From Obrimoposthia wandeli (lineage: Eukaryota), in NCBI GenBank assembly GCA_977020255.1, contig CDROCS010005497.1:62001-126000 (forward strand): 64,000 bases of DNA, given 5' to 3'. Positions 15,482 through 64,000 of this stretch are shown here, in pieces. The notes under the pieces are model-generated. The model ran no database searches, was not told the origin of the DNA, and saw only the letters and a program-made list of their open reading frames with translations. The position numbers were made by a program, and so were the translations under genes. Position 1 is the stretch's first letter, and the number at the start of each line of letters is the position of its first letter.

Positions 15482-15572
15482 TGGAGGAGAATGTCAGAAT
15501 CGAACTGACACAGGCTATTAACCTGACCTGGGTTCAAACCAGGGCCGATACCTAATTTCGGTTGAATTCTCC
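15482..15572 (-). tRNA. tRNA-Ser(TGA)
   Basis: Cloverleaf; anticodon arm CCTGG-TTTGAAC-CCAGG; long variable arm; CCA encoded. Confidence 0.9.
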
Positions 15573-15573
15573 A

Positions 15574-15645
15574 TGGTGGAGTATATCGGTAACGATCCGA
15601 TTCGCCGTCCTTGCAAAGGACAGGTCCAGCCCATCTGGATACCCC
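15574..15645 (-). tRNA. tRNA-Ala(TGC)
   Basis: Loop TTTGCAA; G3.U70 wobble; CCA; short D region. Confidence 0.85.
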
Positions 15646-15653
15646 TTATAATA

Positions 15654-15743
15654 TGGAAGAGAGTTACGGTCTCGAACCGTATGCTGCGAACGCAACACGA
15701 TTTGCTTAGCAAGCAATCTCAGAACCTATCTGATTAACTCTCC
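15654..15743 (-). tRNA. tRNA-Ser(GCT)
   Basis: Loop TTGCTAA; long variable arm; CCA. Confidence 0.9.
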
Positions 15744-15745
15744 AA

Positions 15746-15822
15746 TGGTAGTGGTGAAGGGACTCGAACCCTTAAGACCTGGTTTCTAAGACCAGTATGT
15801 ATGCCAATTCCATCACACCACT
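15746..15822 (-). tRNA. tRNA-Leu(TAG), short variable loop
   Basis: CTGGT-CTTAGAA-ACCAG; A73; CCA; variable region only 5 nt. Confidence 0.85.
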
Positions 15823-15834
15823 AAGTGTACTGTA

Positions 15835-15910
15835 TGGTACCTCCTCTGGGATTTGAACCCAGAAATTTCGGATTTTAAGTCCGTTGCCTATGCCGTTCGG
15901 CTAAGAAGGT
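15835..15910 (-). tRNA. tRNA-Leu(TAA), short variable loop
   Basis: Loop CTTAAAA; A73; CCA; variable region only 5 nt. Confidence 0.85.
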
Positions 15911-15912
15911 AA

Positions 15913-16000
15913 TGGTGGATGCCCTGAGAGTCGAACTCAGCACGTGTCTTTGTTACGGGTTTACAATCCGCTTAAACCAACCGATAGTTTACTGACATCC
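15913..16000 (-). tRNA. tRNA-Tyr(GTA)
   Basis: Loop TTGTAAA; long variable arm; CCA. Confidence 0.8.
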
Positions 16001-16031
16001 AATTAATAGTTTATTGCCAAATTCCGGGCAT

Positions 16032-16064
16032 AAAAAAAGGAGCCTACCCTTTCGAGTGACTCCT
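16032..16064 (-). terminator. Intrinsic terminator (attenuator) upstream of the six-tRNA operon
   Basis: Minus strand AGGAGTC-AC-TC-GAAA-GG-GT-A-GGCTCCT hairpin running into U7. Confidence 0.85.
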
Positions 16065-16099
16065 ATGTGACTTATTATAAAAACTAGGTATACTAGCTT

Positions 16100-16183
16100 T
16101 CAAATTCCACGAGGAGTCCTCTGCCGTGACGACAGATATAAACTATAAGATACTAAGGCTAGTAATGTAGTTAAACTCTTCAT
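16100..16183 (-). CDS. Leader peptide B (27 aa, MKSLTTLLALVSYSLYLSSRQRTPRGI)
   Basis: AAAGGA RBS; Ser/Leu/Tyr/Ala-rich; contains GACTCCT complementary to the terminator 5' arm. Confidence 0.8.
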   Translation of the reverse strand: MKSLTTLLALVSYSLYLSSRQRTPRGI

Positions 16184-16226
16184 GATATTTTCCTTTTATT
16201 TTTGTCTTTCAATGACTGTTATTCCA

Positions 16227-16258
16227 ATTATAGTATAGATATACTTAATCTAACCTTA
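16227..16258 (-). promoter_or_regulatory. Promoter of leader B / six-tRNA operon
   Basis: Minus strand TAAGG ttaga TTAAG tatatctatac TATAAT. Confidence 0.7.
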
Positions 16259-16699
16259 ACGATCACTACTTCTTCTACCTACTTTAGCTTTTGCTTCAGT
16301 CACTAACTGATCTACATCCGACATCATAGCACTTAAATGCTCATAGTCTTCACTATGTACCCAGCATACTGTAGCACCTGGGATTATGAACTTCGGCTTT
16401 TCAGAATAAAGTGCCATAAATTCATCCCCACCAATTCTATAAACTTCTTGTAAATTCTCTGTATGCTGTAATGCGTTAGCAATTTGTTTTATCAACGCAT
16501 CTCCTGCAGCATACCCTTGTTCTCTATTAACCTCATGCAAACCTACAACGTCTATCATTGCAAGCCAGAAAGGTGTACTTATCATTTGTTGTAAGGTCTC
16601 TGCTTCGAAGTCATGTCTTTGTTTTAACCCTGTAAGATAATCATATCTGTACATCTTAACCATGTTCTTCCAATGGACAATTTCTTGTTCTTTTGTCAT
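16256..16699 (-). CDS. Stand-alone GGDEF (diguanylate cyclase-like) protein
   Basis: DYLTGL, MIDVVGLHEVN...GYAAGDALI and an intact YRIGGDEF motif. Confidence 0.85.
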   Translation of the reverse strand: MTKEQEIVHWKNMVKMYRYDYLTGLKQRHDFEAETLQQMISTPFWLAMIDVVGLHEVNREQGYAAGDALIKQIANALQHTENLQEVYRIGGDEFMALYSEKPKFIIPGATVCWVHSEDYEHLSAMMSDVDQLVTEAKAKVGRRSSDR

Positions 16700-16766
16700 A
16701 ATAATAATATTCCTAATGTTTATATTACCTATAATAACATTAAATAACTTATATACATCTTAAATT

Positions 16767-16840
16767 TGGTCCTCGATGATAGAATCGAACTATCGTTCCT
16801 CCCTAATCAGGGGAGTGCACTACCATTATACTAATCGAGA
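16767..16840 (-). tRNA. tRNA-Ile(GAT)
   Basis: CTCCC-CTGATTA-GGGAG; A73; CCA; unusual T at position 37. Confidence 0.75.
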
Positions 16841-16842
16841 AT

Positions 16843-16919
16843 TGGTCGGAAGGTCAAGAATCGAACTTGAATCTCTAGCTTTTCAGGCTAGCGCTCGTAA
16901 CCTAATGAGCTACCTTCCG
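16843..16919 (-). tRNA. tRNA-Phe(GAA)
   Basis: CTAGC-CTGAAAA-GCTAG; CCA. Confidence 0.9.
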
Positions 16920-16994
16920 TGGCGCCACATGAGAGAATTGAACTCTCCTTTCCGACTTGACAAGACGGCGTCCTAACCGATGGACGAATGCAGC
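16920..16994 (-). tRNA. tRNA-Asp(GTC)
   Basis: Loop TTGTCAA; G73; CCA. Confidence 0.85.
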
Positions 16995-17000
16995 TTAATA

Positions 17001-17074
17001 TGGATGAGACAAAAGGGCTCGAACCTTTGATAGGAGATTCAAAGTCTCCGGTGTTGCCACTACACTATATCTCA
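17001..17074 (-). tRNA. tRNA-Gln(TTG)
   Basis: GGAGA-CTTTGAA-TCTCC; CCA. Confidence 0.85.
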
Positions 17075-17077
17075 TTA

Positions 17078-17155
17078 TGGTGCCCAGTATTCGAGTCGAA
17101 CGAATAACCTTCTGCTTACAAGGCAGCTGCTCTAACCAATTGGAGCTAACCAGGC
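17078..17155 (-). tRNA. tRNA-Thr(TGT)
   Basis: Loop CTTGTAA; canonical D arm; CCA. Confidence 0.85.
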
Positions 17156-17158
17156 GTA

Positions 17159-17234
17159 TGGTCTAGATGGTAGGATTCGAACCTACGTGTTCCTCCGTCC
17201 AAGGGAGCCTGGAAACCATTCCCAGCACATCTAG
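17159..17234 (-). tRNA. tRNA-Pro(TGG)
   Basis: Loop CTTGGAC; C1-G72, A73; CCA. Confidence 0.85.
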
Positions 17235-17242
17235 TTTTATTT

Positions 17243-17318
17243 TGGAGTCCTTAGCCAGATTCAAACTAGCACCTCAGGGATTTGCAATCCCGCGCATTAA
17301 TCATTTTGCTATAAAGAC
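17243..17318 (-). tRNA. tRNA-Cys(GCA)
   Basis: Loop TTGCAAA; U73; CCA. Confidence 0.85.
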
Positions 17319-17320
17319 AT

Positions 17321-17398
17321 TGGAGGAAAGTATCGGAATCGAACCGATGTGTTCTAAATTCACAGCTTAGCGTCATTTCCAATTTTGACTACCCTTCC
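17321..17398 (-). tRNA. tRNA-His(GTG), atypical acceptor end
   Basis: CTAAG-CTGTGAA-TTTAG; CCA; no obvious G-1:C73 pair. Confidence 0.75.
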
Positions 17399-17445
17399 AA
17401 GATGAGGACATTTTAAGCCTGTCCTCTTAAGTACATAGTACTTAG

Positions 17446-17526
17446 CTCAACTGGTAGGACTCGAACCTACATAGGATTTCTCCCCAGATTAACAGTCTGG
17501 TGGACTACCGGATGTCCCACAGCTGA
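17446..17526 (-). tRNA. tRNA-Asn(GTT) with extended variable arm
   Basis: CCAGA-CTGTTAA-TCTGG; U1-A72, G73; 13-nt variable region with GGA-GAAA-TCC; CCA not encoded. Confidence 0.8.
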
Positions 17527-47287: not shown

Positions 47288-47367
47288 GTCGTAGTAGCTC
47301 AGTTGGTAGAGCGCCTTCCCTGTAAAATGGAGAAGAGGTCGCAGGTTCAAGTCCTGCCGTCGGCACC
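47288..47367 (+). tRNA. Degenerate tRNA-like gene (Tyr-type loop CTGTAAA)
   Basis: Canonical D arm GCTC-AGTTGGTA-GAGC and T arm GCAGG-TTCAAGT-CCTGC; mismatched acceptor; enlarged anticodon loop. Confidence 0.5.
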
Positions 47368-50919: not shown

Positions 50920-52306
50920 ATGAACTACTTAAAAGCAGCATCAGCAATAGACGGATACAAAGCATCACACAAAGACCAATACCCAAAAGGTACAGACTAC
51001 GTATACTCTAACTTAACTCCAAGACACTCTAAGCACTTCGCTTACAAAGACTTCGACGGACGAGTAGTTGTATTCGGAAACCAATCAATGGTAAAATTCA
51101 TTCATGAATTATGGCAAGACACATTCTTTAACAAACCTGCTGACGAAGTAGTACCTGCACTATTCAGAAGATTATCAAACTACTCAGGGCATAAAGACGT
51201 ACAGCATTTCCATGACTTACACAGAAAAGGTTGCTTACCAGTAGTAATAAAATCCTTAGTAGAAGGTACTAAATCACCATTAGGTGTACCAACATTAACA
51301 ATTGCAAACACACACAAAGACTTTGCATGGATCGTTAACTACCTAGAAACAATCATCTCTGCAGAATCATGGCACACTATGACTTCAGCAACAGTATCAC
51401 ACCAATACAAGAAACTATTAAAACAATGGTCAGACTTAACGTGTGACGACGAATTACACTTACCATTCCAAGCCCACGATTTCTCAATGAGAGGACAAAC
51501 ATCTGTACACTCTGCAGCTAAATCTGGAGCTGGACATTTACTTTCGTTCGCTGGAACTGACACTGTACCTTCGATAGACTTCTTAGAGTACTACTACAAA
51601 GCTGACTGTGAACAGGAACTAGTAGGTTGCTCAATTCCCGCAACTGAGCATTCGACTATGACGACTGGAATCCAAGTAAACATGGACAAAGGTTTATCAT
51701 TACGAGATGCCGAAACAAAAGTATTCAAAAGACTATTAACTAAAACATATCCAACAGGACTATTTGCAGCAGTTTCAGACAGTTACAACTTCTGGGACAC
51801 ATTAACAATAACATTACCTAAACTAAAATCAGAAATTTTAGCAAGACCTATGACAGTAATTAGAAATATAGGAGATCCAACAGCTCCGGGTAAACTAGTT
51901 ATTAGGCCTGATTCTGGAAATCCTATTGATGTTATCTGTGGATTTAGAGTATTAGAAGGGGACCATACAGATGGAGTAAACAAAACACTAGTATTAGATA
52001 ATAACTATAACGTAATTTTAGACAATGGAGTGTACTATAAAGTAGATGGATATTATCACGATGATGGCTGCTGGGTAAACACTCACGCTAATGAAACCAA
52101 CATTACAGCTTCAGAAGCAAAAGGTGCTATCCAAGTATTATGGGAAATCTTTGGAGGAACTACGAACTCTAAAGGTTACAAAGTACTTGACCCTCACATC
52201 GGACTAATCTACGGAGACTCAATCACTCTTGACAGAGCTGACGAAATCTGTAAAAGATTAGAATCACAAGGCTTTGCATCTTCCAATATCGTATTTGGAA
52301 TTGGGT
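50920..52306 (+). CDS. nadV: Nicotinamide phosphoribosyltransferase-like protein, exon 1
   Basis: DGYKASH, HDFSMRG, IPATEHS, VSDSYNFW, IRPDSG, IYGDSIT; splicing restores NIVFGIGSYSFQ. Confidence 0.88.
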
Positions 52307-52590
52307 TAACTTATAATGGCCCCTTTAAGAAGTAATTCTTATCGAAAAACTTATTGAATTGCGGGAACTTTCGACAATCATAAACTACTAAACCTAGGTG
52401 GCGACACACTAGGTGGTGAGAATTAACTACTCTCAGTACAGTAAAAAGGTCTATGATCGATCAATCCGCAGCCAAGCCTCTCAGAAATGAGTGGAAGGTT
52501 CAGAGACTATCCCGAAAGGGAGTAGGCCCGTCAGGCCGAAGCAGTAAGCCCCTACTAAGGTAGGGTGATGATATAGTCCATTCAGTTACT

Positions 52591-52622
52591 TAAGTATTAA
52601 TTAAGTGCTAGTATGTTATACT
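52591..52622 (+). promoter_or_regulatory. Internal promoter for the intron endonuclease
   Basis: TAAGT attaa TTAAG tgctagtaTGt TATACT followed by a CAGGAG RBS. Confidence 0.6.
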
Positions 52623-52650
52623 TGTTAAATAGAGACAGGAGACATACAAC

Positions 52651-53616
52651 ATGACAAACAAAGAAAAATTTATAGAAAAAGCAAATAGAAAGTACAGTAA
52701 TAAATTTGATTATTCACAGTTCACATACCTCAACGCTAAGACCAAAGGGACCCTAGTCTGCCCTACACATGGAGAATTTCTTCAAAACCCTGATAAGCAC
52801 CTTACATCTAAATATGGATGTCCAGTATGTGCATTAGAAGGAAGAATAGAAACATCTACAGGGGTATCTACAGTAGGCTGCCCTAAATATACTTGGGAAG
52901 AGCAGAAGAGTAGACTGGAAACTAGGTTTCCTTCACTTACATTCACCTGTGAAAAATATGAAGTAACTACTTCAACTGTAATAGGACTATGCCCAGAACA
53001 TGGGACGTTTGAAACAACATCAGCCACATTACTTAGAAAAAATGCTAAGTTTGGATGTAAGTCCTGTGGAGTTGCTGGAGCGAAAGCCACAAGAACCGGG
53101 ACTTTCAGAGAATTTATCTTACAAGCTTCCAAAATATTCAATAACAAGTACACTTATAAGTGTGATAATTACATGAATAAGAAGAGTATAGTTACCTGTA
53201 CATGTGATGTACATGGGGACTTTAATAAATCTGCTCAAAAGCATGTAGGGGGCCAAGGTTGTCCTAGATGTAATATTGATGCCCTTATACTCCAAGGAAA
53301 ACTCCCTGGAGGTTACTGTGAAACTATATTTTCTCGCAGCGATGCATTAAAAAATAAACCTGCTACAATCTACTACCTAAAAATGGGTAGCCTATACAAA
53401 ATAGGAATAACTATAAATTTAAAACGAAGACTATCAAACATATCCTCAAAAGCTTCTATACCTATAGAAGTGATAGACACCTTTGATACATCACTATATG
53501 AGGCATACCTTTTAGAGCAACAGCTTCTAGAAAAGTATGCAGAGTATAGGACAAGTAATGAATTCTCGACAGAGCTTTTTACTTGGGATGTACTAGAAGG
53601 AAAAATACTTAAGTAA
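52651..53616 (+). CDS. Intron-encoded homing endonuclease (CPxHG zinc-ribbon repeats plus GIY-YIG-like C-terminus)
   Basis: Three CPxHGxF...GCPxC repeats; IYYLK...LYKIGIT...RRL. Confidence 0.8.
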   Translation: MTNKEKFIEKANRKYSNKFDYSQFTYLNAKTKGTLVCPTHGEFLQNPDKHLTSKYGCPVCALEGRIETSTGVSTVGCPKYTWEEQKSRLETRFPSLTFTCEKYEVTTSTVIGLCPEHGTFETTSATLLRKNAKFGCKSCGVAGAKATRTGTFREFILQASKIFNNKYTYKCDNYMNKKSIVTCTCDVHGDFNKSAQKHVGGQGCPRCNIDALILQGKLPGGYCETIFSRSDALKNKPATIYYLKMGSLYKIGITINLKRRLSNISSKASIPIEVIDTFDTSLYEAYLLEQQLLEKYAEYRTSNEFSTELFTWDVLEGKILK

Positions 53617-53623
53617 CTGAATG

Positions 53624-53916
53624 CATACTCATTCCAAGGAACTACTAGAGATACATTTGGTATGGCAGTTAAAGCAACAGCTTGTAGAGTCAACGGAAAA
53701 CTAGTAGACGTATACAAAGACCCAATCGGAGACTCATCTAAGAAATCCGCTAAAGGATTATTACGAGTCGACATTGTTAATGGTAATTACAAACTATCAG
53801 ACCAAGTCTCTCCAGAAGCAGAGCAAGGTGGAGAGCTAAGAACTATCTACAACGAAGGTAGATTCTACAACGAGCTTACTTTAGAACAGATAAGAGAAAA
53901 CCTAAGGAACTCATAG
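53624..53916 (+). CDS. nadV: NAMPT-like protein, exon 2
   Basis: YSFQGTTRDTFGMAVKAT...KDPIGDSSKKSAKGLL. Confidence 0.88.
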
Positions 53917-54316: not shown

Positions 54317-55141
54317 ATGCAACCAAACTTTAACGTATCAAGTGGAGAGTACTCAGTATTCAAATTCCCAAGTGGAGAAATCCAAGTAACTCTAAACGAA
54401 GAACCATATAAATTAGAAAAACTTACTATCACAGGCTCAGTATTATCATCAGATCATACAATGGAACTATTACAATTAATAGAAGCTATTAGATTCGAAG
54501 GTAAAGACTTCCCTATTAAACTAGTTATGCCTTACTGTGCCTACTCTAGGCAAGATAGAAGATGCAACCCAGGAGAATCATTCTCACTAGGAGTATTTGT
54601 TAAACTAATTAACTCCTGTAATTTCGAGTCAGTAATTATGTATGATAACCATTCTGATGTAGCTACCGCGTTAATCAATAACTGCACAAGTATCCCAGTA
54701 AGACAAATCTTACCTTTAGACATGTATGAGGGAGACTATGATTACTTTATTTCTCCTGATGCAGGAGCGAACAAAAAAGTACAAGAGTGCTCAAAAAGAT
54801 TCAATGTACCTATGATTCGTGCTGATAAAGTAAGAGAAACATCAACTGGTAAAATACTTGAAACAGTAGTATATACTGACGATGACCAACTAAAAGACTC
54901 TACGGTATTGATAGTAGACGACATTGTAGCTGGTGGTAGAACATTCATTGAGATTGCTAAATCTTTAAAAGCTATCGAACCATCAGTAACAATTCACTTG
55001 TACTGTACACACGGTTTCTTTAGTAAAGGTTTACATGATTTACGTGCAGCAGGTATTACTAAGTTCATTACAACTGACTCCGTATACCAATATACAGATC
55101 CTACTGTACTTGCAACTGACATGCAAATCATAAACCTATAA
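54317..55141 (+). CDS. prs: Ribose-phosphate pyrophosphokinase-like protein
   Basis: FPSGEIQV, PYCAYSRQDR, SPDAGA, IVDDIVAGGRTF. Confidence 0.88.
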   Translation: MQPNFNVSSGEYSVFKFPSGEIQVTLNEEPYKLEKLTITGSVLSSDHTMELLQLIEAIRFEGKDFPIKLVMPYCAYSRQDRRCNPGESFSLGVFVKLINSCNFESVIMYDNHSDVATALINNCTSIPVRQILPLDMYEGDYDYFISPDAGANKKVQECSKRFNVPMIRADKVRETSTGKILETVVYTDDDQLKDSTVLIVDDIVAGGRTFIEIAKSLKAIEPSVTIHLYCTHGFFSKGLHDLRAAGITKFITTDSVYQYTDPTVLATDMQIINL

Positions 55142-55219: not shown

Positions 55220-55486
55220 ATGGCACAAGAATCAATTTTAGAACAATTAGCAAGAGAATTAGCACCAAAGAAAGCTAAAGCAACTAAAAAAGCAAAATAC
55301 GTATTAGATGTTAACGGTAATTTACAAAAACAAAGACCAACAACTAAGAAAGAGCTAAAAGAAGCAGTAGTTGCTATCGCATTAGCTAACCCAACAGCAA
55401 AAATCACTGTATACAAATTAGAAGGTGCTATCAACGTAGCATTACCAGTTTCTGGTATTTCAGTAGACTCAGAGCAAGGAGAATAA
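55220..55486 (+). CDS. Small Lys-rich protein (88 aa)
   Basis: AAGGAG RBS; APKKAKATKKAK N-terminus; highly biased codons. Confidence 0.7.
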   Translation: MAQESILEQLARELAPKKAKATKKAKYVLDVNGNLQKQRPTTKKELKEAVVAIALANPTAKITVYKLEGAINVALPVSGISVDSEQGE

Positions 55487-55487
55487 C

Positions 55488-55607
55488 ATGGCAGATTTCA
55501 ACATTGATGACTTAATCGCAGACGTAACATCTGACGCAGATACAACTACAACTGTATCAACAGCATCTGGAGCAGTTTCAGAAGCTAAATCAAAAAGTGG
55601 AAAGTAG
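55488..55607 (+). CDS. 39-aa peptide MADFNIDDLIADVTSDADTTTTVSTASGAVSEAKSKSGK
   Basis: Manual translation; AAGGAG RBS; starts 1 nt after the previous stop; below the ORF-track length cutoff. Confidence 0.7.
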   Translation: MADFNIDDLIADVTSDADTTTTVSTASGAVSEAKSKSGK

Positions 55608-55672
55608 GGCGTAACCTCTTCCCAATCAGAAGGTACTAACCCTACCTTCTACCCCAACTCAAAGGAAAATAC

Positions 55673-57091
55673 ATGCATTATATTTTAGACCAGAAATCAG
55701 TAGAAGTGAGCTCTGCTCCAAGTTTCTTCCACCACCCCGACTTGGTATTCAACATTGAAAGCTTACCTGAAAGAATAAGAATAGGTGACTACACATTCTC
55801 TACAGAATGTTTTAAACCAACAAACAATATTATTCCTCATAACAGGCTAATCTATAAGTCTCTGAGACACCATGGAAGTAGCTTACTTTTTATTCCTGTG
55901 CCATTTACAATAGACTCAAGCACATCACGTGGTATTAGGAGCTACTCCTCATTTACATCTGGATATACCTCTACTTATCGAGCCAACGAATTCGTGTATG
56001 ATGAATCTCTAAGAATCTCATTAGATGGTCACTTCTGGAAGCCTCAAAGCAAAGTAACTCACAGATTTGCATCAAACTATCTTAAAGAACAAATTAGAGC
56101 TAGATACGGATTCTTCGACAGACCTAAGTCAGGTAAATCAAACGTAGTTCTAGATTCATTCTTCCCAGGCCTACTATACAAATATAACATGGACCACACT
56201 TTACTTCAAGAAGCTGAAACTTTCCCAAAAACTTCAGTAACTATCTCTCCTCTAATTGGAGACTTAATGAATGTTAAAGTTATCCCAATAGACCAACTTA
56301 CTAAAGTATTAGGGTACACAGTTAAAGACTTAGCAGACCTATTAAAAAAAGTAAAAGCAAAAAACTTGGACTTTATATTCGCAGGAGCAGGTGGAACAGG
56401 AATGAACACAGCATATTGGTTAAATGAATTATCTAAATATACAAATGTAATCAACATCTTCAACTCAATCACAGTATTTGAGAAAGAAGGTATAGAATTC
56501 TCCAACATCTTAAGATTCCCTCTACCATTATCAGCTTATGCTAATAACTTTGGAAGAAACTGGAAACCAAGTGTAATGGCTCCACTATTGACAAGACTAA
56601 CGACAAGAGATCCTCAGCTAATTAACAGCTATATAGAGAACAACAGTAATAAATTACCTTATACATTGTTTACTTCAGAGTATAATTATGAAAAAAGATC
56701 GTATTCTGTTCCCACAGCTAAGAAGCAGACAGTAGTATATGGTGCTCCAGGGATAGAACACAGAAACTACCTTTCCTCTCTTGGTAACTTCATCTGTGCA
56801 ACACACGCCTCAACAACTTGTTCAATATGGCTAAACCCAGCTCAAACAGAAAACATTGAAGTCGAATCATACGGAATGATCCAATTAGGAGGCTTCTTTA
56901 TGAATCAATTACAAATGTGTATCTCTACTATGGAGCTATTAGCATCCGACATAGACTTAAACACTAAAGATCATCACTATATGGACTATGAGTTCACTGG
57001 AGATATCAAACTAAAAACAGACCGTGCATATCAGTGGCAAATCGACAGAGATCTATTAATGATGACTGAAGAACAAGCAAATGCAATATAA
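55673..57091 (+). CDS. ThiF/MoeB/E1-like adenylating enzyme with N-terminal extension
   Basis: FIFAGAGGTG nucleotide-binding loop; ITVFEKEGIEFSNILRF resembles the D.D.vexsNl.RQ segment. Confidence 0.7.
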   Translation: MHYILDQKSVEVSSAPSFFHHPDLVFNIESLPERIRIGDYTFSTECFKPTNNIIPHNRLIYKSLRHHGSSLLFIPVPFTIDSSTSRGIRSYSSFTSGYTSTYRANEFVYDESLRISLDGHFWKPQSKVTHRFASNYLKEQIRARYGFFDRPKSGKSNVVLDSFFPGLLYKYNMDHTLLQEAETFPKTSVTISPLIGDLMNVKVIPIDQLTKVLGYTVKDLADLLKKVKAKNLDFIFAGAGGTGMNTAYWLNELSKYTNVINIFNSITVFEKEGIEFSNILRFPLPLSAYANNFGRNWKPSVMAPLLTRLTTRDPQLINSYIENNSNKLPYTLFTSEYNYEKRSYSVPTAKKQTVVYGAPGIEHRNYLSSLGNFICATHASTTCSIWLNPAQTENIEVESYGMIQLGGFFMNQLQMCISTMELLASDIDLNTKDHHYMDYEFTGDIKLKTDRAYQWQIDRDLLMMTEEQANAI

Positions 57092-57099
57092 GGACCAAC

Positions 57100-58371
57100 A
57101 TGTTCATACCAAATAAAACAACAATATTAGACCGTGTCATGAAAGACGATTTAAACGACTTCCATTCTCAATACTCTCTAGGAGCAACAATAGAGTCAAG
57201 TGTAAATAAATCTGTAACAGAAGCCGACGTAATTTATCCAATAGATATGACTAAAGCCTCTACTAATAAACTACTATCCCAAGATAGCTATTGTAACGAC
57301 CCAAAACACCCAGACTCAACTTCAAAAGCCTATAATTGTGTACCTCTATATGAAAATGTAATTAATAAAATCCTTACAATAGAAGGTGCATACACTTTTA
57401 AAGAAGCTATTCCAAAAATATTACCGTTCATTGAGAAAGCGGGATCAAACTTTTATGGAGCATTATTAAGAGATACAGAGAAGAACACTTTAATCCTTAA
57501 CCCATTCCACATACTATCCGCAGTATCAAACATAAAGTTAAACTCAAAAAGAACATATACAATTATCTTGTTCTTTTATGCTAATAGATCAGAAATGGAT
57601 AAAAAATATAGAACAAGTGTCTCAGATCCAGTACTAGTAGAACAACAATTAGACGCTCTATTACACTCTTTTGGAACTAAAGTCACATATAAGACTAAAC
57701 TTTCTGCAATGGAAAAACACGATAATGGGTCAATTTCATTAGTTACAGCCTCATGGTCTGACGTAGTTTCTCCTGGCGCTCTTGGAGAAGAAAACTACAT
57801 TGTAGCACATCAAATCCTTGCTAGAGGAGTTATCGCTCCATTTTATGGTGCAACAGCCTTAACAAAATCACCAACAGGTTCTGCATCAGGGTGTCATATC
57901 ACACCAATGAGGTCATGTAATGTCTCTGACTCACACAGAGGAGGGGGCCTAAATAACAGAGGAACATCTCCAGTATACTCCTCAGTATGTACAGGTTCAC
58001 AGTCTAACTCAACATTAGCAGGTCTACGTTCATTAACACATTGTAATCTATTATCACCATACTCAACAACTACAATCGTTGAAGGTGCTTTAGCTTACGT
58101 GGATGCTAGCATAAATAAATGTCTTCAAATATTCAAATCAGCAGGATATATACAAGACTACAAAAGTATTGCGCATGAAGCACTAGCTCAAAATGTACCT
58201 TCAAAAGAAGAAATAGAAGCATACAAAAACAATACATTCCCTACATACTTCTTCGACCACAACGACGCAACAGACTTCGAAGCCGTAGATACAAGATACA
58301 CCGAAATCAGAGACTACCTTGCACAACAAAGGAAAATAAATGACGCAAACAACAATCACGTATCCAACTAA
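57100..58371 (+). CDS. Hypothetical protein, possible prokaryotic E2-like domain
   Basis: CNVS...SVCTG resembles the NV...G.iC.G segment of prokaryotic E2s; lies between E1-like and JAB genes. Confidence 0.4.
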   Translation: MFIPNKTTILDRVMKDDLNDFHSQYSLGATIESSVNKSVTEADVIYPIDMTKASTNKLLSQDSYCNDPKHPDSTSKAYNCVPLYENVINKILTIEGAYTFKEAIPKILPFIEKAGSNFYGALLRDTEKNTLILNPFHILSAVSNIKLNSKRTYTIILFFYANRSEMDKKYRTSVSDPVLVEQQLDALLHSFGTKVTYKTKLSAMEKHDNGSISLVTASWSDVVSPGALGEENYIVAHQILARGVIAPFYGATALTKSPTGSASGCHITPMRSCNVSDSHRGGGLNNRGTSPVYSSVCTGSQSNSTLAGLRSLTHCNLLSPYSTTTIVEGALAYVDASINKCLQIFKSAGYIQDYKSIAHEALAQNVPSKEEIEAYKNNTFPTYFFDHNDATDFEAVDTRYTEIRDYLAQQRKINDANNNHVSN

Positions 58372-59608
58372 AGTACCAGAACCAACAGTTGTCGCTACTA
58401 CTAGTATTATAGATACAAGAACCCTAAAAAACCAAGGAGTTATCTTCGTAAATCAATCCGCTATGCAGAACATTTACAAGAACTCTGGCCCCTTAGCAAA
58501 AGCCAACGAATACCAAGTGCACTACTGGTTTTTAAATTTAAGATTTCGAGCAGAGGATAACTCTTTACTTGACATCGCAATCCCAACAGTGTATTTTAAC
58601 TACGAACAATTTGTTTCAGGTGCAAGAATAGACTTTGAAATGTCAGACGTATCAGCTATGTCTACTAAAGTAATTCCTATTCACAACATGAAAGTAAATG
58701 AGCTACAAGCTTCAGGATTTAAAGAAAACTTAGAATCTGAATTCGGAGTAACTTTCGAAGAAATGTCAGTAGACGTTGGTTCAATTCACAAACATCCAGG
58801 GGGCTCATCACACCAAGCATTCTCAGGAACTGACTTAGACACTAAAGCCACGGAACATGGAGTAGTTTATCCCCTAGCTTCAGCCCAAGATGACAAACCA
58901 AACTTTGCAGGAATTATGGCAATCGACTCAGGAATCTGTAATGTAGCTCACTATGAGTACAGAGTTGCAAATGGAACATTAGGTACAGATTTAAAATACG
59001 TACAAGGAAGATGTGAAGCAATCATTATTCAGGATACTAAAACTATCTCAGCAGTAGAAACTCTATTAAATGTATCTCAAGCAGCTTACAAGATAAGAGA
59101 AAAGAACTCAGCCTTATCAGAAAAACAAACTGAAGACTTTGCCACAATCTACTCTAGAACAGGTTTCAAACCTTTTACAGACACAATTAGACCTGAAAAT
59201 GTAAAGAAAACAGCTACAGCTCAACACCACTTCCCACCATCTTGGAAAGGTACAAGTAAGACTCCTATCCCAACAATCGTAAACAACCCGTCTAAGTTGA
59301 CAGAGAAGGCTTATGAACAGCTAACTTTAGCTGAGAAGGTAAACTACTTACTAACATTAGACAAAGTCTACTATGGGGACCATATAACGCTTACAGACTA
59401 TACAACATTAACCGAAACTGAAATCAAAGAAAGTATTGATGACACTTGGGAACTAATAGAGGAAGAATTAGCCCTTACTGCCCCAGAAACTACTAACCTA
59501 ACTCGAGACGTAATGATTGAAGCATTAGTATCATATGGAGTTGCAAGAGCAACCCTAATAACAGCTCCAGACTATCAAATAGCTAGCTGGTATACAAACT
59601 CACTATAA
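58340..59608 (+). CDS. JAB/JAMM (MPN+) metallopeptidase-like protein
   Basis: NEYQVHY upstream Glu and GSIHKHP...AFSGTD (HxH...SxxD). Confidence 0.7.
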   Translation: MTQTTITYPTKVPEPTVVATTSIIDTRTLKNQGVIFVNQSAMQNIYKNSGPLAKANEYQVHYWFLNLRFRAEDNSLLDIAIPTVYFNYEQFVSGARIDFEMSDVSAMSTKVIPIHNMKVNELQASGFKENLESEFGVTFEEMSVDVGSIHKHPGGSSHQAFSGTDLDTKATEHGVVYPLASAQDDKPNFAGIMAIDSGICNVAHYEYRVANGTLGTDLKYVQGRCEAIIIQDTKTISAVETLLNVSQAAYKIREKNSALSEKQTEDFATIYSRTGFKPFTDTIRPENVKKTATAQHHFPPSWKGTSKTPIPTIVNNPSKLTEKAYEQLTLAEKVNYLLTLDKVYYGDHITLTDYTTLTETEIKESIDDTWELIEEELALTAPETTNLTRDVMIEALVSYGVARATLITAPDYQIASWYTNSL

Positions 59609-59617
59609 GGAACCAAT

Positions 59618-60415
59618 ATGCTACACTATTACGACCCCGAGAAAACTAAATTCTACAGACAATTCGAGATCCAAAAGAAGAACAAGAAAACCAGAAGAAT
59701 TTGTGCTCCTTCATCAGCCTTACTAAGCCTACAACGAAACCTGTTATCAGACTATGAAATCATGTTCCGTAATCTTGCAATAATGAATAACTTAGAAGGT
59801 ATTTTCCATGGTTTCCTTAAGAATCGTAACATTGTAACTTGTGCAAGAGCCCACAAAGGTTTTCAAAACACAATTACTATGGACATCTCAAACTGTTTTG
59901 ACTCAATAACAAGAGAAATGCTTGAAACTAAGATAATAGCAAAACTGCTACCAGCAGAAGTTTTCCATAAGAACAATAGCTTAGCACAAGGTTTTGCAAC
60001 ATCACCAATATTAGCCAACATCTACCTAATAGCACCTATCGCAGATGTAAGAAAGATGGTAGCTAAACTTGTAGGAATAGACTTTTCCCTAACATGTTAC
60101 GCAGATGATATACATATTAGTACAAATTGCATAGATGAAGGAAAGCTAGGCTTAATCCAACAGATGGTTATCTACATCTTTAAGCAATATAAGTTGATAG
60201 TAAACCCAACTAAAACAAGAGTAGCCTACACTAAATTTGGTAATAGAAGAATCTTAGGAATACAAGTTGGAGACTATACACTAACTCCATCTAGAAAACT
60301 CAAGAAGAAAATCCGAGCAGCCCGTCACCAAAACAATGGACCATCTCTAGGAGGACTAGTTACAGCTTCAAAGATGTATCTACCCAAACTTTTAAGAGAA
60401 CAAGAGAAACAATAA
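59618..60415 (+). CDS. Retron-type reverse transcriptase (265 aa)
   Basis: RRICAP, FHGFLKNRNIVTCARAH (region X, NAxxH-like), MDISNCFDSI, QGFATSPILAN, YADD, RRILGIQV (region Y, VTG-like). Confidence 0.9.
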   Translation: MLHYYDPEKTKFYRQFEIQKKNKKTRRICAPSSALLSLQRNLLSDYEIMFRNLAIMNNLEGIFHGFLKNRNIVTCARAHKGFQNTITMDISNCFDSITREMLETKIIAKLLPAEVFHKNNSLAQGFATSPILANIYLIAPIADVRKMVAKLVGIDFSLTCYADDIHISTNCIDEGKLGLIQQMVIYIFKQYKLIVNPTKTRVAYTKFGNRRILGIQVGDYTLTPSRKLKKKIRAARHQNNGPSLGGLVTASKMYLPKLLREQEKQ

Positions 60416-60427
60416 ACCCCTATAAGC

Positions 60428-60660
60428 GAGTGCTTAGTAAGGGAGTATATATAGAAATAAGTACTTAACAAGACTATGAATATAGTGAAGCAGTTCGAAT
60501 CGGCTGTGTAACAATTGCTATATTTATGATAGTTTTGGGCAAAGCCCAACTATCACCTGCAGCTTCATCTCCAGTGATCTGGTAAACAGGGCCCTCCAGG
60601 CCCTGGCATCCGGATCTACGCCGACGCTGTCAAGTATATATACTCTCTCATTAAGCACTC
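60428..60660 (+). ncRNA. Retron-like ncRNA cassette 1
   Basis: 26-nt inverted repeat 60428-60453/60635-60660 (2 G.U, 1 mismatch); G at 60454; conserved hairpin 60489-60514. Confidence 0.8.
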
Positions 60661-60665
60661 ACTAA

Positions 60666-60886
60666 GTTAGCTTAGCGAAGCACTAGATAGACATAAAATT
60701 AACTATGTTCTTATCGTAGTAGCTCGTTTCGGCTATGTAACCAACGATACGAATAAGATAGTTAAACCAAAATGATCTAGTTCAAATATTCTCCGAATAT
60801 ATGATCCTAGATCATAAAGGTATAACTATCTACAGAGACCAGCATCAAAGCTGGTTAGCACGTATCTAGTGTTTCGTTAAGCTAAC
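60666..60886 (+). ncRNA. Retron-like ncRNA cassette 2
   Basis: 24-bp inverted repeat 60666-60689/60863-60886 (2 G.U); G at 60690; variant hairpin 60718-60741. Confidence 0.8.
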
Positions 60887-60892
60887 ACCAAC

Positions 60893-61107
60893 AATTATTT
60901 TACTGAAGCACCTATTAGAAATTAAATAAACTAAGAGTACTTTGGAGCAGTTCGAATCGGCTGTGTAACAACTGATTTACTTATAATAGTTTAGCGCTCC
61001 GCGTGCTACCAGGACCCAAGGGTCCTAGATCCGCACCACCGCGCAAAACTATTACCTGAGGACCGTATCCGTCTTCAGAAGGTAATAGGTGTTTCAGTAA
61101 GATAATT
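60893..61107 (+). ncRNA. Retron-like ncRNA cassette 3
   Basis: 25-bp inverted repeat 60893-60917/61083-61107 (2 G.U); G at 60918; hairpin 60946-60971 identical to that in cassette 1. Confidence 0.8.
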
Positions 61108-61322: not shown

Positions 61323-61780
61323 TGATAACTTTACCAATCTACTGGACAAACATTAAAGTACGAACTAAATCCACTACTCACTTAGTAGGAGAGAATTTTT
61401 TTAGAAACGCTCATTTTCATGTTAAGAATAAGATGAAAAAAGACTATACTGAATTAGTCGCAGCTCAGAAAGATAACCTTTCACCACTAGAGAGGCCATT
61501 TGAAGTTACGTATGTAGTATACTACAAGAACCCTTCAATGGATGCTAGTAATGTTGCCTCTAAGATAGAAAAATTCTATTTAGATGCACTCCAACATATA
61601 GGAATTATCCCTGAAGATAATGTGAAGTACCATAAGAAATCAACTTGGATCGTTGGGGGTCAAGATAAAGACAACCCAAGACTGGAAATATTTATAAAGG
61701 AGTTTGAGAATGATCAAGCCTACAACAAACACTTATCCGACACTCTTAGATACCTCCAAAATAGCAGTCTGGGACATTGA
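61322..61780 (+). CDS. RusA-like Holliday junction resolvase
   Basis: MDASNVASKIEKFYLDAL...IIPEDN, NPRLEIFI. Confidence 0.7.
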   Translation: MITLPIYWTNIKVRTKSTTHLVGENFFRNAHFHVKNKMKKDYTELVAAQKDNLSPLERPFEVTYVVYYKNPSMDASNVASKIEKFYLDALQHIGIIPEDNVKYHKKSTWIVGGQDKDNPRLEIFIKEFENDQAYNKHLSDTLRYLQNSSLGH

Positions 61781-62525
61781 AACAGAACTAATCCCTAAAC
61801 AAGGGCCATTAGGTGTAAACCTTATCTTCTGTAACCATATAAAAGTTAATGCAGAACCTTTAAAGAGATTCACATACTTATGGCATCCAACATCCTCAGG
61901 CAATCTTAAAGGGGCAAACAATCTTATAAACTCCTGTGAATTCATGGTTGGTCACAATATCATTAACTTTGATATCACAGTAATTGAAAACAAGATAGGT
62001 AAGCTTACACCTTATCCCTTAGACACTCTACTAATAGCCAAACTTATGTACACTTCCGATGAGCTCCTCTCAATGGATATCGGAATCAAAGATATGCCTA
62101 AAGCCTTATGGGGACGATACTCATTAAAAGCTTTCGGTTACAGGTTCAAATCTAACAAGATAATCTTCGAACAATTTGACAAGATGACTGATGACATGCT
62201 TGATTACTGCGACCAAGATGTGTTATTAACTTTTAAGTTATTCACACACCTACGTTCTATGCCAAACTTTCCCTCAATGGAAACTATCCATTTAGAGAAC
62301 CAAGTAGCTAATATCATAAAATACCAAGAACAAGCAGGTTTTTACTTCAACATCGAAGCAGCCCGAAAACTCTACACAGAAATGCGTTTCGAACAAGGTA
62401 CAATCGAACGAAGACTAAAGAAAAGGTTCCGTCCTATGTTTTTACCCGACGGTAAGCCTAAAGAAACTAACAAACTAATAAAAAAGAAAAAATCTACACG
62501 GAGGACACACAAACTATGGCATTAA
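61704..62525 (+). CDS. Family A DNA polymerase, N-terminal 3'-5' exonuclease part (frame ends early)
   Basis: VWDIET, GHNIINFD, SLKAFGYR, YCDQDV, LENQVA...GFYFN. Confidence 0.8.
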   Translation: MRMIKPTTNTYPTLLDTSKIAVWDIETELIPKQGPLGVNLIFCNHIKVNAEPLKRFTYLWHPTSSGNLKGANNLINSCEFMVGHNIINFDITVIENKIGKLTPYPLDTLLIAKLMYTSDELLSMDIGIKDMPKALWGRYSLKAFGYRFKSNKIIFEQFDKMTDDMLDYCDQDVLLTFKLFTHLRSMPNFPSMETIHLENQVANIIKYQEQAGFYFNIEAARKLYTEMRFEQGTIERRLKKRFRPMFLPDGKPKETNKLIKKKKSTRRTHKLWH

Positions 62526-63429: not shown

Positions 63430-64000
63430 TAGAAGACCAATAACTTATTTCAAAACGGACGAATAAAACTCCCAGCCAAGAACAAATATAAATGGTTCTC
63501 TCAACTTCCGCACTCTCTCTCCATTATGAGCAAAATGGAGAGAATACCAGCCAATCAAACTTACAAAGTTCGACGCAACTGATAACCAAATAAAAGTCTG
63601 GTTAAAACGTATGTATAATCTCTCCTCTTCCAAACCTTCACGGACAAAGGCACGTAAAAGTAGACCGAGACCAACTCCCTGAATCCTTAGGAGACTATGG
63701 GAAAGATCTAAGACGATACCTTAAGCTTAAGAAAGATATGTCCCAGCTAGGTGAAACAGATAACTCACTAATAGCCTCATAAGCTTACCTTCCGACCAAT
63801 CAATCCATGGTCGAGTAGATACAATTGGAGCAGCAACACACCGTTGCACCCATTCGTCCCCAAACTTAGCTCAAATACTCCTCCGGATGGAGTATTCCGA
63901 GGACTATTCACAACCCCTCCAGGTTGCTACACTCATTAAGCTGATTTAGCTAACATAGAGATCCGAGTATTAGCCCACTATCTAGCAAACATATGATGGC
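63430..64000 (+). pseudogene. Frameshifted family A DNA polymerase domain fragments
   Basis: Fragments in different frames: GEYQPIKLTKF, IHGRVDTIGAATHRCTHSSPNLAQI (from 63803), ADLANIEIRVLAHYL (from 63940). Confidence 0.75.

What the first reader, a model, noticed from the sequence alone, without database searches (positions are those of the whole stretch)
55220..60415. Phage E1-like / E2-like / JAB operon translationally coupled to the retron RT
Seen: ThiF/E1-like (55673-57091), a Cys-containing possible E2 (57100-58371), a JAB protease (58340-59608) and the RT (59618) are separated by 8 nt, a 32-nt overlap and 9 nt, so they appear to be one operon. Established: E1-E2-JAB modules perform ubiquitin-like conjugation in bacterial systems such as CBASS Cap2/Cap3 and Bil, and retrons pair an RT/msDNA with effector proteins. 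Inference: this is either a phage protein-conjugation system (counter-defence or virion modification) or a new retron type whose effector is a conjugation cascade. The E2 call is weak.
Basis: partly seen in the sequence, partly recalled or inferred. Interest (0 to 1): 0.75.

Follow-up and report, generated by a model that had tools for sequence, protein, structure and literature searches.

The report
Phage peptide-tagging cassette beside retron-like RT
A large lytic phage carries a conserved, unannotated gene set (a 39-residue peptide ending in glycine plus one residue, an E1-like activating enzyme, a new-fold cysteine protein and a probable metallopeptidase) that looks like a miniature ubiquitin-style or peptide-modifying pathway. 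The reverse transcriptase next to it is a separate, optional retron-like module with three structured RNAs.

Summary
The ORFs and their spacing are as described.

- **E1-like (55673-57091): confirmed by structure.** AlphaFold pLDDT is 88. Foldseek gives 129 PDB matches, all E1-like (ThiF, UBA7, MccB, Uba4, Atg7, PaaA).
- **"E2" (57100-58371): not supported.** The model is confident (pLDDT 90) and matches nothing in the PDB. It is a new fold with one invariant cysteine.
- **"JAB" (58340-59608): motif level only.** It has an invariant Glu...His-x-His...Ser-x-x-Asp pattern, and no profile search supports it.

A 39-residue micro-ORF (55488-55607) lies between an 88-residue small-protein gene and the E1-like gene in every related locus. 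It has a conserved Ser/Ala-Gly 1-10 residues before the stop.

This five-gene core occurs in about 27 distinct metagenomic phage loci. It was not found in 185,579 bacterial and archaeal genomes or in isolate phages.

The RT is retron-like and tightly abutted here, but separable. It is absent from at least 7 core-bearing loci, and its relatives occur without the core. What tracks the RT is an array of 1-4 structured ~220-nt RNAs, three of them here at 60425-61107.

Best reading: a peptide C-terminal activation or conjugation cassette next to an independent multi-RNA retron-like module.

The parts
55220..55486 (+). 88-aa small protein: N-terminal helix, Lys-rich linker, small alpha/beta domain, acidic tail. 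First gene of the conserved core; fold and role unknown.
   Evidence: ORF. Homologues lie directly upstream of the cassette in at least 20 loci. No Pfam, PHROG, NCBIfam or PADLOC hit. The PDB profile search gave only an artefact from repeated RecA chains.
55488..55607 (+). It has an amphipathic N-terminal part, a Thr/Ser-rich middle and a C-terminus ...KSKSGK. Candidate substrate or modifier of the E1-like enzyme.
   Evidence: The ATG lies 1 nt after the previous stop, with AAGGAG 6 nt upstream. A profile finds it in all 34 loci that hold sequence upstream of A1: 23 distinct peptides of 37-54 aa, each with Ser/Ala-Gly 1-10 residues before the stop, and Lys two residues before that Gly in 17 of 23. 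One relative (L025) encodes two tandem copies in one ORF.
55673..57091 (+). 472-aa E1-like (ThiF/MoeB-type) adenylating enzyme with an extra N-terminal beta-rich domain of about 200 aa ('A1').
   Evidence: AlphaFold2 on 81 sequences: pLDDT 88, pTM 0.73. Foldseek against the PDB: 129 matches at E<=1e-3, the top 50 all E1-like (UBA7, ThiF with TM 0.53 by target, MccB, Uba4, Atg7, PaaA, UBA5). Invariant G238, G240, G241, N278, R281, K298. hhalign against E. coli MoeB aligns the Gly-rich loop and the Asn/Arg motif, P 0.005.
57100..58371 (+). 423-aa protein of unmatched fold with an invariant cysteine (C297) ('A2').
   Evidence: AlphaFold2 on 97 sequences: pLDDT 90, pTM 0.83. No PDB match (best E 0.029, TM 0.11). 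BFVD returns only an uncharacterised family member. The family has 299 representatives at 50% clustering. No Pfam hit in 97 members. Invariant G120, N134, P247, Y249, N274, C297, S319.
58340..59608 (+). 422-aa protein ('A3'). The N-terminal ~250 aa carry a JAMM-type motif (E57, H150-x-H152, S162-x-x-D165). The C-terminal part is variable and helical.
   Evidence: The motif residues are invariant or nearly so in 82 and in 20 sequences. Fold not tested. Pfam Prok-JAB is weak in 2 of 82 members, and Rho_N matches the C-terminus in 8 of 82. hhalign against E. coli YeeS aligns only the His motif and is not significant.
59618..60415 (+). 265-aa retron-like reverse transcriptase; a separable module.
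   Evidence: Pfam RVT_1 1e-19. PADLOC RT_III-A 8.7e-36. NCBIfam retron St85 RT 103 bits, below its 235-bit cut-off. The catalytic YADD is invariant in 13 relatives.
60425..60663 (+). Structured RNA unit 1: 27-bp closing stem, conserved P2 hairpin, long variable hairpin.
   Evidence: the repeat finder I1. Fold z = -8.5. Paralogous to units 2 and 3.
60666..60886 (+). Structured RNA unit 2.
   Evidence: the repeat finder I3. Fold z = -12.1.
60893..61107 (+). Structured RNA unit 3.
   Evidence: the repeat finder I2. Fold z = -8.4. The three closing stems plus one inner hairpin are the only inverted repeats of at least 22 nt within 300 nt in the whole 64-kb window.

Best explanation
Window 55220-59608 is a conserved five-gene cassette of a lineage of large lytic podophages distantly related to N4-like phages. 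Its centre is an E1-like enzyme that activates the C-terminus of a ribosomally made ~40-residue peptide encoded just upstream. Proposed steps: (1) the JAMM-motif protein A3 trims the 1-10 variable residues that follow the conserved Gly; (2) the E1-like A1 holds the linear peptide with its extra N-terminal domain and adenylates the exposed Gly carboxylate; (3) the invariant Cys297 of A2 takes over the activated peptide as a thioester, filling the role of an E2 without being one by fold, and passes it to an amine acceptor. The acceptor is unknown; the Lys-rich 88-aa protein encoded first is one candidate, host or phage proteins are others. Shown: the gene set and its synteny, the E1-like fold, the conserved Gly-proximal peptide end, the invariant Cys and the JAMM-type motif. 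Inferred: every chemical step and the target. The RT at 59618-60415 and the three RNAs at 60425-61107 form a second, retron-like module. It is co-oriented and abutted here and probably co-transcribed, but it is evolutionarily separable and not required by the cassette.
For: E1-like fold: (129 PDB matches, all E1-like; model pLDDT 88). Nucleotide-loop and Asn/Arg residues are invariant and align with E. coli MoeB. MccB, an E1-like enzyme that acts on a short linear peptide encoded upstream of it, gives the longest structural alignments (300-370 columns), which is consistent with a matching N-terminal peptide-binding domain. The micropeptide is present in all 34 loci with upstream sequence, with a conserved Ser/Ala-Gly followed by a short variable tail. 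A relative carries a tandem two-copy precursor. The JAMM-type residues of A3 are invariant. C297 of A2 is invariant across 97 representatives at about 18% mean column identity. The order small protein, peptide, A1, A2, A3 is fixed in about 27 distinct loci. Spacers are tight or overlapping. Separability of the RT. The RNAs follow the RT.
Against: The peptide is too short for a beta-grasp fold, so it is not a classical Ubl. The fold of A3 was not tested, and every profile test for JAB was negative. A2 has no known fold, so its E2-like role rests on one invariant Cys. I could not locate an equivalent of the Mg-binding Asp of E1 enzymes in A1, because no residue-level superposition was available. 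Pfam ThiF does not reach threshold (weak in 7 of 81 members). No acceptor is identified. The same parts fit a peptide-natural-product pathway or a sulfur-carrier pathway about as well (see rivals).
Confidence: 0.55

Rival explanations
1. RiPP-like pathway. The cassette makes a modified free peptide, as MccB or PaaA do. The E1-like enzyme modifies the peptide C-terminus (nucleotidylation or cyclisation, for example onto the Lys two residues before the Gly). A3 removes the follower or leader, and A2 tailors the product. The product acts as a small molecule on the host or on competitors.
For: MccB and PaaA are among the best structural matches, and MccB aligns over nearly its whole length. The substrate is a short linear peptide encoded immediately upstream, with a conserved N-terminal helix that could be a leader and a conserved C-terminal core. 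There is no beta-grasp modifier and no UBC protein.
Against: The MccA-type C-terminal Asn is absent, since the peptides end in Gly plus a variable tail. No export or immunity gene is conserved next to the cassette. A lytic phage has no obvious use for a secreted peptide. The invariant Cys in a 420-aa partner and the co-conserved Lys-rich 88-aa protein fit transfer to a protein better.
Confidence: 0.22
2. New retron type. RT plus RNA are the sensor, and the E1-like/A2/A3 cascade is the effector of a single system.
For: The RT directly abuts or overlaps A3 in about 15 distinct loci. Pairwise identities of A1 and RT correlate (Spearman 0.51 over 105 pairs). The RT's best profile matches are retron RTs.
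Against: The core lacks the RT in L002, L004, L008, L009, L022, L025 and L036, where unrelated replication genes follow A3. The RT is displaced by 0.7-4.6 kb in L027, L034 and L040. RT relatives lie in other contexts in L050 and L053. The RNAs go with the RT even when it is displaced (L048). RT-less loci are scattered through the A1 tree. No relative was found in 185,579 bacterial and archaeal genomes, where retrons live.
Confidence: 0.1
3. Sulfur-carrier pathway. The trimmed peptide is converted by the E1-like enzyme to a C-terminal thiocarboxylate. A2 supplies or relays sulfur through Cys297, for thiolation of a nucleic acid or cofactor in the phage, which carries its own tRNA set.
For: ThiF and Uba4, the sulfur-carrier E1s, are top structural matches. 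Pairing of E1-like and JAB proteins with a C-terminal-Gly carrier is typical of bacterial sulfur-transfer operons (PMC1779556). The phage has 14 tRNA genes.
Against: No rhodanese, cysteine desulfurase, PP-loop or other sulfur-insertion enzyme is present in the cassette or conserved nearby. Known carriers are beta-grasp proteins ending in Gly-Gly, whereas these are ~40-aa peptides ending in Ser/Ala-Gly plus a tail.
Confidence: 0.08

Closest known systems
MccB/MccA (microcin C) and PaaA/PaaP (pantocin A): E1-like enzymes acting on short ribosomal peptides
   Same: An E1-like adenylation domain carries an extra N-terminal domain. The substrate is a short linear peptide encoded directly upstream. 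Both are among the best structural matches.
   Different: The peptide ends in Gly plus a tail, not Asn. The cassette adds a JAMM-motif protein, a 420-aa new-fold Cys protein and an 88-aa small protein. It sits in lytic phages, not in bacterial antibiotic clusters.
Bacterial Ubl-E1-E2-JAB operons (Iyer, Burroughs and Aravind 2006 classes; Bil; CBASS Cap2/Cap3)
   Same: An E1-like enzyme and a protein with a JAMM-type motif are in one operon with a small gene product that has a Gly near its C-terminus.
   Different: No UBC-fold E2. No beta-grasp modifier. No PADLOC match to Cap2, Cap3 or Bil models. Found only in phage contigs.
Sulfur-carrier systems (ThiS-ThiF, MoaD-MoeB, CysO-Mec+, TtuB-TtuC)
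   Same: ThiF-type fold. A JAB-type peptidase is paired with a Gly-terminal carrier.
   Different: The carrier is not a beta-grasp protein. No sulfur-donor or sulfur-insertion enzymes are linked.
Retrons (nearest profiles: type III-A and II-A RTs)
   Same: The RT's best matches are retron RTs. The adjacent RNAs are closed by long inverted repeats (a1/a2-like), with a conserved unpaired G at the inner end of the 5' arm and a long variable hairpin.
   Different: The RNAs lie downstream of the RT in arrays of 1-4. The RT is short (265 aa), below the NCBIfam cut-off. It has A-x-x-H without the Asn and lacks the Gly of the VTG triplet (against PMC7736814). It is carried by lytic phages and has no obligate effector.
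Lambda-type tail assembly proteins I and K (phage Ubl plus JAB)
   Same: The only previously described phage pairing of a Gly-terminal small domain with a JAB peptidase (PMC1779556).
   Different: That pair sits in tail genes and has no E1-like enzyme. Here the cassette sits among replication and nucleotide-metabolism genes.

Membership tests
E1-like (ThiF/MoeB/UBA) adenylating enzymes | Rossmann-type adenylation domain fold | tested here: met
   Foldseek: 129 PDB matches at E<=1e-3, the top 50 all E1-like, probability 1.00, on a model with pLDDT 88.
E1-like (ThiF/MoeB/UBA) adenylating enzymes | Gly-rich nucleotide loop and the Asn/Arg/Lys ATP-contacting residues | tested here: met
   G238, G240, G241, N278, R281 and K298 are invariant in 81 sequences. 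The loop and the Asn/Arg motif align with E. coli MoeB (P 0.005).
E1-like (ThiF/MoeB/UBA) adenylating enzymes | Match to the curated sequence model (Pfam PF00899) at its threshold | tested here: not met
   The window protein has no hit at E<=10. Hits are weak in 7 of 81 members, best E 0.014.
E1-like (ThiF/MoeB/UBA) adenylating enzymes | Mg-binding Asp and adenylation activity | not testable with these tools
   No residue-level superposition or assay was available.
E2 / UBC | UBC fold | tested here: not met
   Model pLDDT 90. No PDB match at all: best E 0.029, TM 0.11, and no E2 among the top 50.
E2 / UBC | Catalytic cysteine | tested here: inconclusive
   C297 is invariant in 97 representatives, but a conserved Cys is not specific to E2 enzymes.
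JAB/MPN+ (JAMM) metallopeptidases | Glu ... His-x-His ... Ser-x-x-Asp metal and catalytic motif | tested here: met
   E57, H150, H152, S162 and D165 are invariant or at least 90% conserved in 82 and in 20 sequences. The His-to-Ser spacing is two residues longer than the textbook pattern.
JAB/MPN+ (JAMM) metallopeptidases | MPN fold | not tested
JAB/MPN+ (JAMM) metallopeptidases | Profile similarity to known JAB families | tested here: not met
   Pfam: none for the window protein; Prok-JAB weak in 2 of 82 members. PDB profile searches found no JAB. hhalign against YeeS is not significant. PHROGs: none.
Ubiquitin-like (beta-grasp) modifiers | Beta-grasp fold | tested here: inconclusive
   The micropeptide is 37-54 aa, too short for the fold. 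The 88-aa protein has no profile match, and its fold was not predicted.
Ubiquitin-like (beta-grasp) modifiers | Conserved C-terminal Gly, often followed by residues that are trimmed | tested here: met
   All 23 distinct micropeptides have Ser/Ala-Gly 1-10 residues before the stop.
CBASS Cap2/Cap3 and Bil systems | Match to the PADLOC models of these systems | tested here: not met
   No PADLOC hit for A2, A3 or the small protein. A1 has one weak hit, to an unrelated candidate model (E 0.0086).
Retron | RT of the retron clade | tested here: inconclusive
   The best profiles are retron RTs (RT_III-A 8.7e-36), but the NCBIfam retron St85 score of 103 bits is below the 235-bit cut-off.
Retron | NAXXH motif (region X) and VTG triplet (region Y), as defined in PMC7736814 | tested here: not met
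   Across 13 RTs, Ala and His of A-x-x-H are invariant, but the Asn is replaced. The Val/Thr-Thr of region Y is followed by Ala, Cys, Ser or Trp, never Gly.
Retron | Adjacent RNA closed by inverted repeats, with a conserved branching G | tested here: met
   Closing stems of 20-29 bp occur in 28 units from 14 loci. An unpaired G follows the 5' arm in at least 22 of 28. G-U pairs and covariation in the P2 hairpin support a + strand RNA. The position (downstream) and copy number (1-4) are atypical.
Retron | msDNA production | not testable with these tools
   Needs nucleic-acid data from infected cells.
Retron | Cognate effector that co-occurs with the RT | tested here: not met
   The RT and the E1-like core each occur without the other.

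The most novel reading that the evidence does not exclude
Lytic phages deploy a ubiquitin-like conjugation pathway built from unusual parts: a ~40-residue non-beta-grasp peptide as the tag and a new protein fold in place of the E2. They use it to tag host or phage proteins during infection. In the lineages that also carry the RT, the multi-template retron-like module is functionally wired to it, for example with its DNA-RNA product or RT complex as scaffold, trigger or acceptor.
Probability: 0.12. Interest if true: 0.9.

Novelty: new variant of a known kind. Interest (0 to 1): 0.7.

Why it matters
E1-like enzymes paired with Gly-terminal carriers are the root of ubiquitin signalling, sulfur transfer and some peptide antibiotics. 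In viruses of bacteria, the only description I found was the tail-assembly Ubl/JAB pair.

Here a whole cassette is conserved across hundreds of metagenomic phage sequences, and no annotation library recognises it. It uses a peptide too short to be a Ubl, and a confidently folded protein with no structural relative. If it is a tagging system, it is a new minimal form of protein conjugation and a probable host-takeover or counter-defence tool. If it is a peptide-product pathway, it is a new RiPP class made by lytic phages.

The neighbouring module is of separate interest. It is a retron-like RT in lytic phages with tandem arrays of different template-like RNAs placed after the gene.

Tried and rejected
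- **Family libraries.** Pfam, PHROGs, NCBIfam and PADLOC on the single proteins found nothing for the three enzymes or the small protein.
- **Isolate phages.** tblastn and megablast against 50,697 records found no match for A1, A3 or the DNA. The RT has only 26-29% identity matches.
- **PDB sequence profiles.** Searches with A1, A2, A3, the A3 N-domain and the 88-aa protein gave nothing meaningful. The RecA 'hit' sums repeated 24-residue chance matches in multi-copy chains.
- **Profile comparisons.** hhalign of A1 against E. coli MoeB aligned the right motifs but with low probability. A3 against E. coli YeeS was not significant.
- **Family-wide scans.** Pfam gave only weak ThiF (7 of 81) and Prok-JAB (2 of 82) signals. 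PHROGs on the A3 domain gave nothing.
- **Natural fusions.** I looked for fusions among A1, A2, A3 and the small protein to fold two at once; there are none.
- **RNA.** Rfam found nothing on the RNA region, and ARAGORN found no tRNA there. RNAalifold on a MAFFT alignment of the P2 hairpin predicted no pairs because of register shifts, so I gave the helix by hand.
- **Literature.** I found no paper describing a phage E1-like/JAB/RT cassette or a lytic-phage retron with RNA arrays.
- **Readings rejected.** CBASS/Bil membership. The Prs-like PRTase upstream as a type III retron effector: it pairs with the NAMPT-like gene instead.

Full report
**1. Observation**

The spacers are 8 nt, a 32-nt overlap and 9 nt.

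The surroundings are phage genes:
- a terminase 35% identical to those of N4-like phages;
- tail and appendage genes, RNA ligases, a polynucleotide kinase-like protein and pieces of a family A DNA polymerase;
- 14 tRNA genes.

The region lies in the + strand block of replication and nucleotide-metabolism genes, just upstream of the polymerase exonuclease gene.

**2. What the databases say**

The RT is recognised everywhere: Pfam RVT_1 1e-19, PHROG 'polymerase' 2e-29, PADLOC RT_III-A 9e-36, and NCBIfam retron St85 RT at 103 bits against a 235-bit cut-off.

The three large proteins upstream and the 88-aa protein match nothing in Pfam, PHROGs, NCBIfam or PADLOC, even at lax thresholds. They match nothing in 50,697 isolate phage records.

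They are nevertheless real families:
- 90 relatives of A1, 36 of A2 and 176 of A3 in the 90% clustered protein collection;
- 299 representatives of A2 at 50% clustering.

All come from metagenomes, on contigs up to 100-126 kb. None carries a name. A scan of 185,579 bacterial and archaeal genomes found no relative of A3.

**3. The E1-like call is right**

An AlphaFold2 model of A1 built on 81 sequences is confident (pLDDT 88, pTM 0.73). Foldseek against the PDB gives 129 matches at E<=1e-3, and the top 50 are all E1-like enzymes: UBA7, ThiF (TM 0.53 by target over ~240 columns), MccB, Uba4, Atg7, PaaA and UBA5.

The Gly-rich loop (G238, G240, G241) and N278, R281 and K298 are invariant. hhalign places them on the corresponding loop and Asn/Arg motif of E. 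coli MoeB.

A1 has about 200 extra N-terminal residues. MccB, which has an N-terminal peptide clamp, aligns over 300-370 columns, more than the bare ThiF domain. I take this as a hint, not proof, of a peptide-binding domain.

**4. The E2 call is not supported**

A2 was modelled on 97 diverse sequences with pLDDT 90 and pTM 0.83. The PDB search returns nothing: best E 0.029, TM 0.11, and no E2 among the top 50 hits. The viral library returns only an uncharacterised member of the same family.

What remains is one invariant cysteine, C297, among seven invariant positions in a family with 18% mean column identity. That is compatible with a thioester or persulfide role in a new fold.

**5. The JAB call is plausible but unproven**

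The N-terminal ~250 residues of A3 are the conserved part. E57, H150, H152, S162 and D165 are invariant or nearly so. They form the Glu...His-x-His...Ser-x-x-Asp pattern of JAMM/MPN+ peptidases, with two extra residues between the His pair and the Ser.

Every profile test failed:
- Pfam on the protein and on 82 members (Prok-JAB in 2, E 0.2);
- PDB profiles;
- hhalign against the E. coli JAB-domain protein YeeS, which aligned only the His motif;
- PHROGs.

The C-terminal third is variable and matches Rho_N in 8 of 82 members.

**6. A missed gene: the likely substrate**

A 39-codon ORF (55488-55607) lies between the 88-aa gene and A1. It starts 1 nt after the previous stop, behind an AAGGAG site.

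A profile of it finds a counterpart in all 34 loci that hold sequence upstream of A1, always in the same place. These are 23 distinct peptides of 37-54 aa. They share:
- an amphipathic N-terminal stretch;
- a Thr/Ser-rich middle;
- near the end, Ser/Ala-Gly followed by 1-10 unconserved residues, with Lys two residues before that Gly in 17 of 23.

In the window the end reads ...KSKSGK. One relative (L025) encodes two copies head to tail in one ORF, like a poly-modifier precursor.

A conserved Gly followed by a disposable tail is what E1-dependent carriers look like before a peptidase exposes the Gly. The 88-aa protein is also conserved in this position in at least 20 loci. It has a Lys-rich linker, and its fold is unknown.

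**7. Synteny**

In every related locus with enough sequence (about 27 distinct ones) the order is small protein, peptide, A1, A2, A3.

The RT behaves differently:
- It follows A3 directly, abutting or overlapping it, in about 15 distinct loci.
- It is displaced by 0.7-4.6 kb in L027, L034 and L040.
- It is absent within at least 4 kb in L002, L004, L008, L009, L022, L025 and L036. There A3 is followed by a PD-(D/E)XK nuclease, ThyX, an RlaP-like nucleotidyltransferase or a GIY-YIG endonuclease.
- RT relatives (36-46% identity) lie with no core within 8 kb on either side in L050 and L053, next to a NUMOD endonuclease or an AAA ATPase.

On an A1 tree the RT-less loci are scattered among RT-bearing clades. 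A1 and RT identities correlate only moderately (Spearman 0.51). The association is old and frequent but dispensable in both directions.

**8. What goes with the RT**

The ~700 nt after the RT stop are not coding. They hold three paralogous units (60425-60663, 60666-60886, 60893-61107), each closed by a 24-29 bp stem. Fold z-scores are -8.4 to -12.1 per unit and -22.8 for the whole stretch. These stems, plus one hairpin inside unit 2, are the only inverted repeats of at least 22 nt within 300 nt in the entire window.

Each unit contains:
- a P2 hairpin with a conserved apical stem-loop, exact in units 1 and 3;
- a long variable hairpin;
- a short third hairpin.

Units of the same architecture, 1-4 per locus, follow the RT in 12 of 14 RT-adjacent loci. 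They also follow it in L046, L048 (where the RT is displaced), L051, L052 and L055. None follows A3 in RT-less loci.

The closing stems differ completely in sequence between units yet stay complementary. The inner end reads ...UA|GA on the 5' side in at least 22 of 28 units. That leaves a conserved unpaired G where retrons have their branching G (PMC7736814).

The P2 apical helix covaries: 82% of cells paired against 68% in shuffles, 10 double-change cells against 3.1, 0 of 500 shuffles as high, and slid registers far lower. It uses G-U pairs, which fixes the RNA to the + strand.

Against strict retron membership:
- the RNAs lie downstream and in arrays;
- the RT is short and below the curated cut-off;
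- it keeps only A-x-x-H of NAXXH and lacks the Gly of VTG.

There is no Rfam family for the RNA.

**9. Mechanism**

I commit to a peptide C-terminal activation cassette: trimming after the conserved Gly by A3, adenylation by A1, take-over by Cys297 of A2, and transfer to an unknown amine acceptor.

Shown are the parts and their conservation. Inferred are all the chemical steps. Confidence is 0.55 for activation of the peptide by the E1-like enzyme as the core function. It is lower for protein conjugation as the outcome.

The rivals are:
- a RiPP-like free peptide product, with MccB/PaaA as the analogy (0.22);
- a single retron system with the cascade as its effector (0.10, largely refuted by distribution);
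- a sulfur-carrier pathway (0.08).

The RT and RNAs are best read as an independent retron-like module that sits in this hot spot and is probably co-transcribed.

**10. Novelty and limits**

The kind of system (E1-like enzyme, Gly-terminal carrier, JAMM-type peptidase) is known. The combination is not in the libraries or the literature I could search: a ~40-aa peptide, a new-fold Cys protein and a lytic-phage setting.

The limits are:
- the A3 fold is untested;
- there is no residue-level superposition for A1;
- the acceptor is unknown;
- there are no expression data.

Slip: during reasoning I recalled from memory short motif strings of known JAMM and ThiF/MoeB proteins.

Noticed in passing
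window 50920-53916 (intron match 52297-52600; HNH/T5orf172 ORF 52651-53616): The NAMPT-like gene is interrupted by a group I intron (Rfam RF00028, 77 bits, E 6e-18) that carries a homing-endonuclease ORF. The short ORF at 53662-53916 matches the C-terminal part of uninterrupted NAMPT-like genes in relatives.
   Followed up: partly
window 50920-52335 and 54317-55141: A NAMPT-like and a Prs-like phosphoribosyltransferase gene pair lies directly upstream of the cassette. From memory, this pairing resembles the phage NAD+ reconstitution pathway NARP1 (Adps/Namat). The same pair lies upstream of the cassette in several relatives.
   Followed up: no
L028, L029, L031, L032, L034/L035, L036, L047/L048: In seven distinct relatives the A3 gene is in two ORFs that split at the same profile position. 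In one lineage about 300 nt lie between the pieces. This could be an intron, a two-subunit form or a frameshift; I did not resolve it.
   Followed up: no
L025:269-496: Two tandem copies of the micropeptide lie in one reading frame, each ending in the conserved Gly motif. This looks like a poly-modifier precursor.
   Followed up: partly
window 15482-17526 (- strand) and 47288-47367 (+ strand): A cluster of 14 tRNA genes. A further tRNA-like gene on the other strand is read by ARAGORN with a 4-base anticodon and passes the Rfam tRNA threshold at 42 bits.
   Followed up: no
window 61704-62525 and 63530-63946; L001:15680-19733: The family A DNA polymerase is encoded in several pieces, interspersed with endonuclease-like ORFs in the relative L001. 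This is a second gene region shaped by homing elements.
   Followed up: no
window 59089-59608 (C-terminal third of A3): This part is variable and helical. In 8 of 82 family members it matches the Rho_N (SAP-like) nucleic-acid-binding motif. That hints A3 may be anchored to RNA or DNA.
   Followed up: no
L050:7680-8762 and L053:7983-8795: RT relatives lie in other gene contexts: next to a NUMOD endonuclease, or next to an AAA_5 ATPase plus an unknown 280-aa protein. No long inverted-repeat unit was detected in the 1.2 kb downstream.
   Followed up: partly
L002:1-672: A relative's contig (122 kb) encodes a metallo-beta-lactamase-fold protein that hits the Anti-Pycsar Apyc1 family, about 9 kb upstream of its cassette. 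These phages therefore carry known counter-defence genes in the same arm.
   Followed up: no
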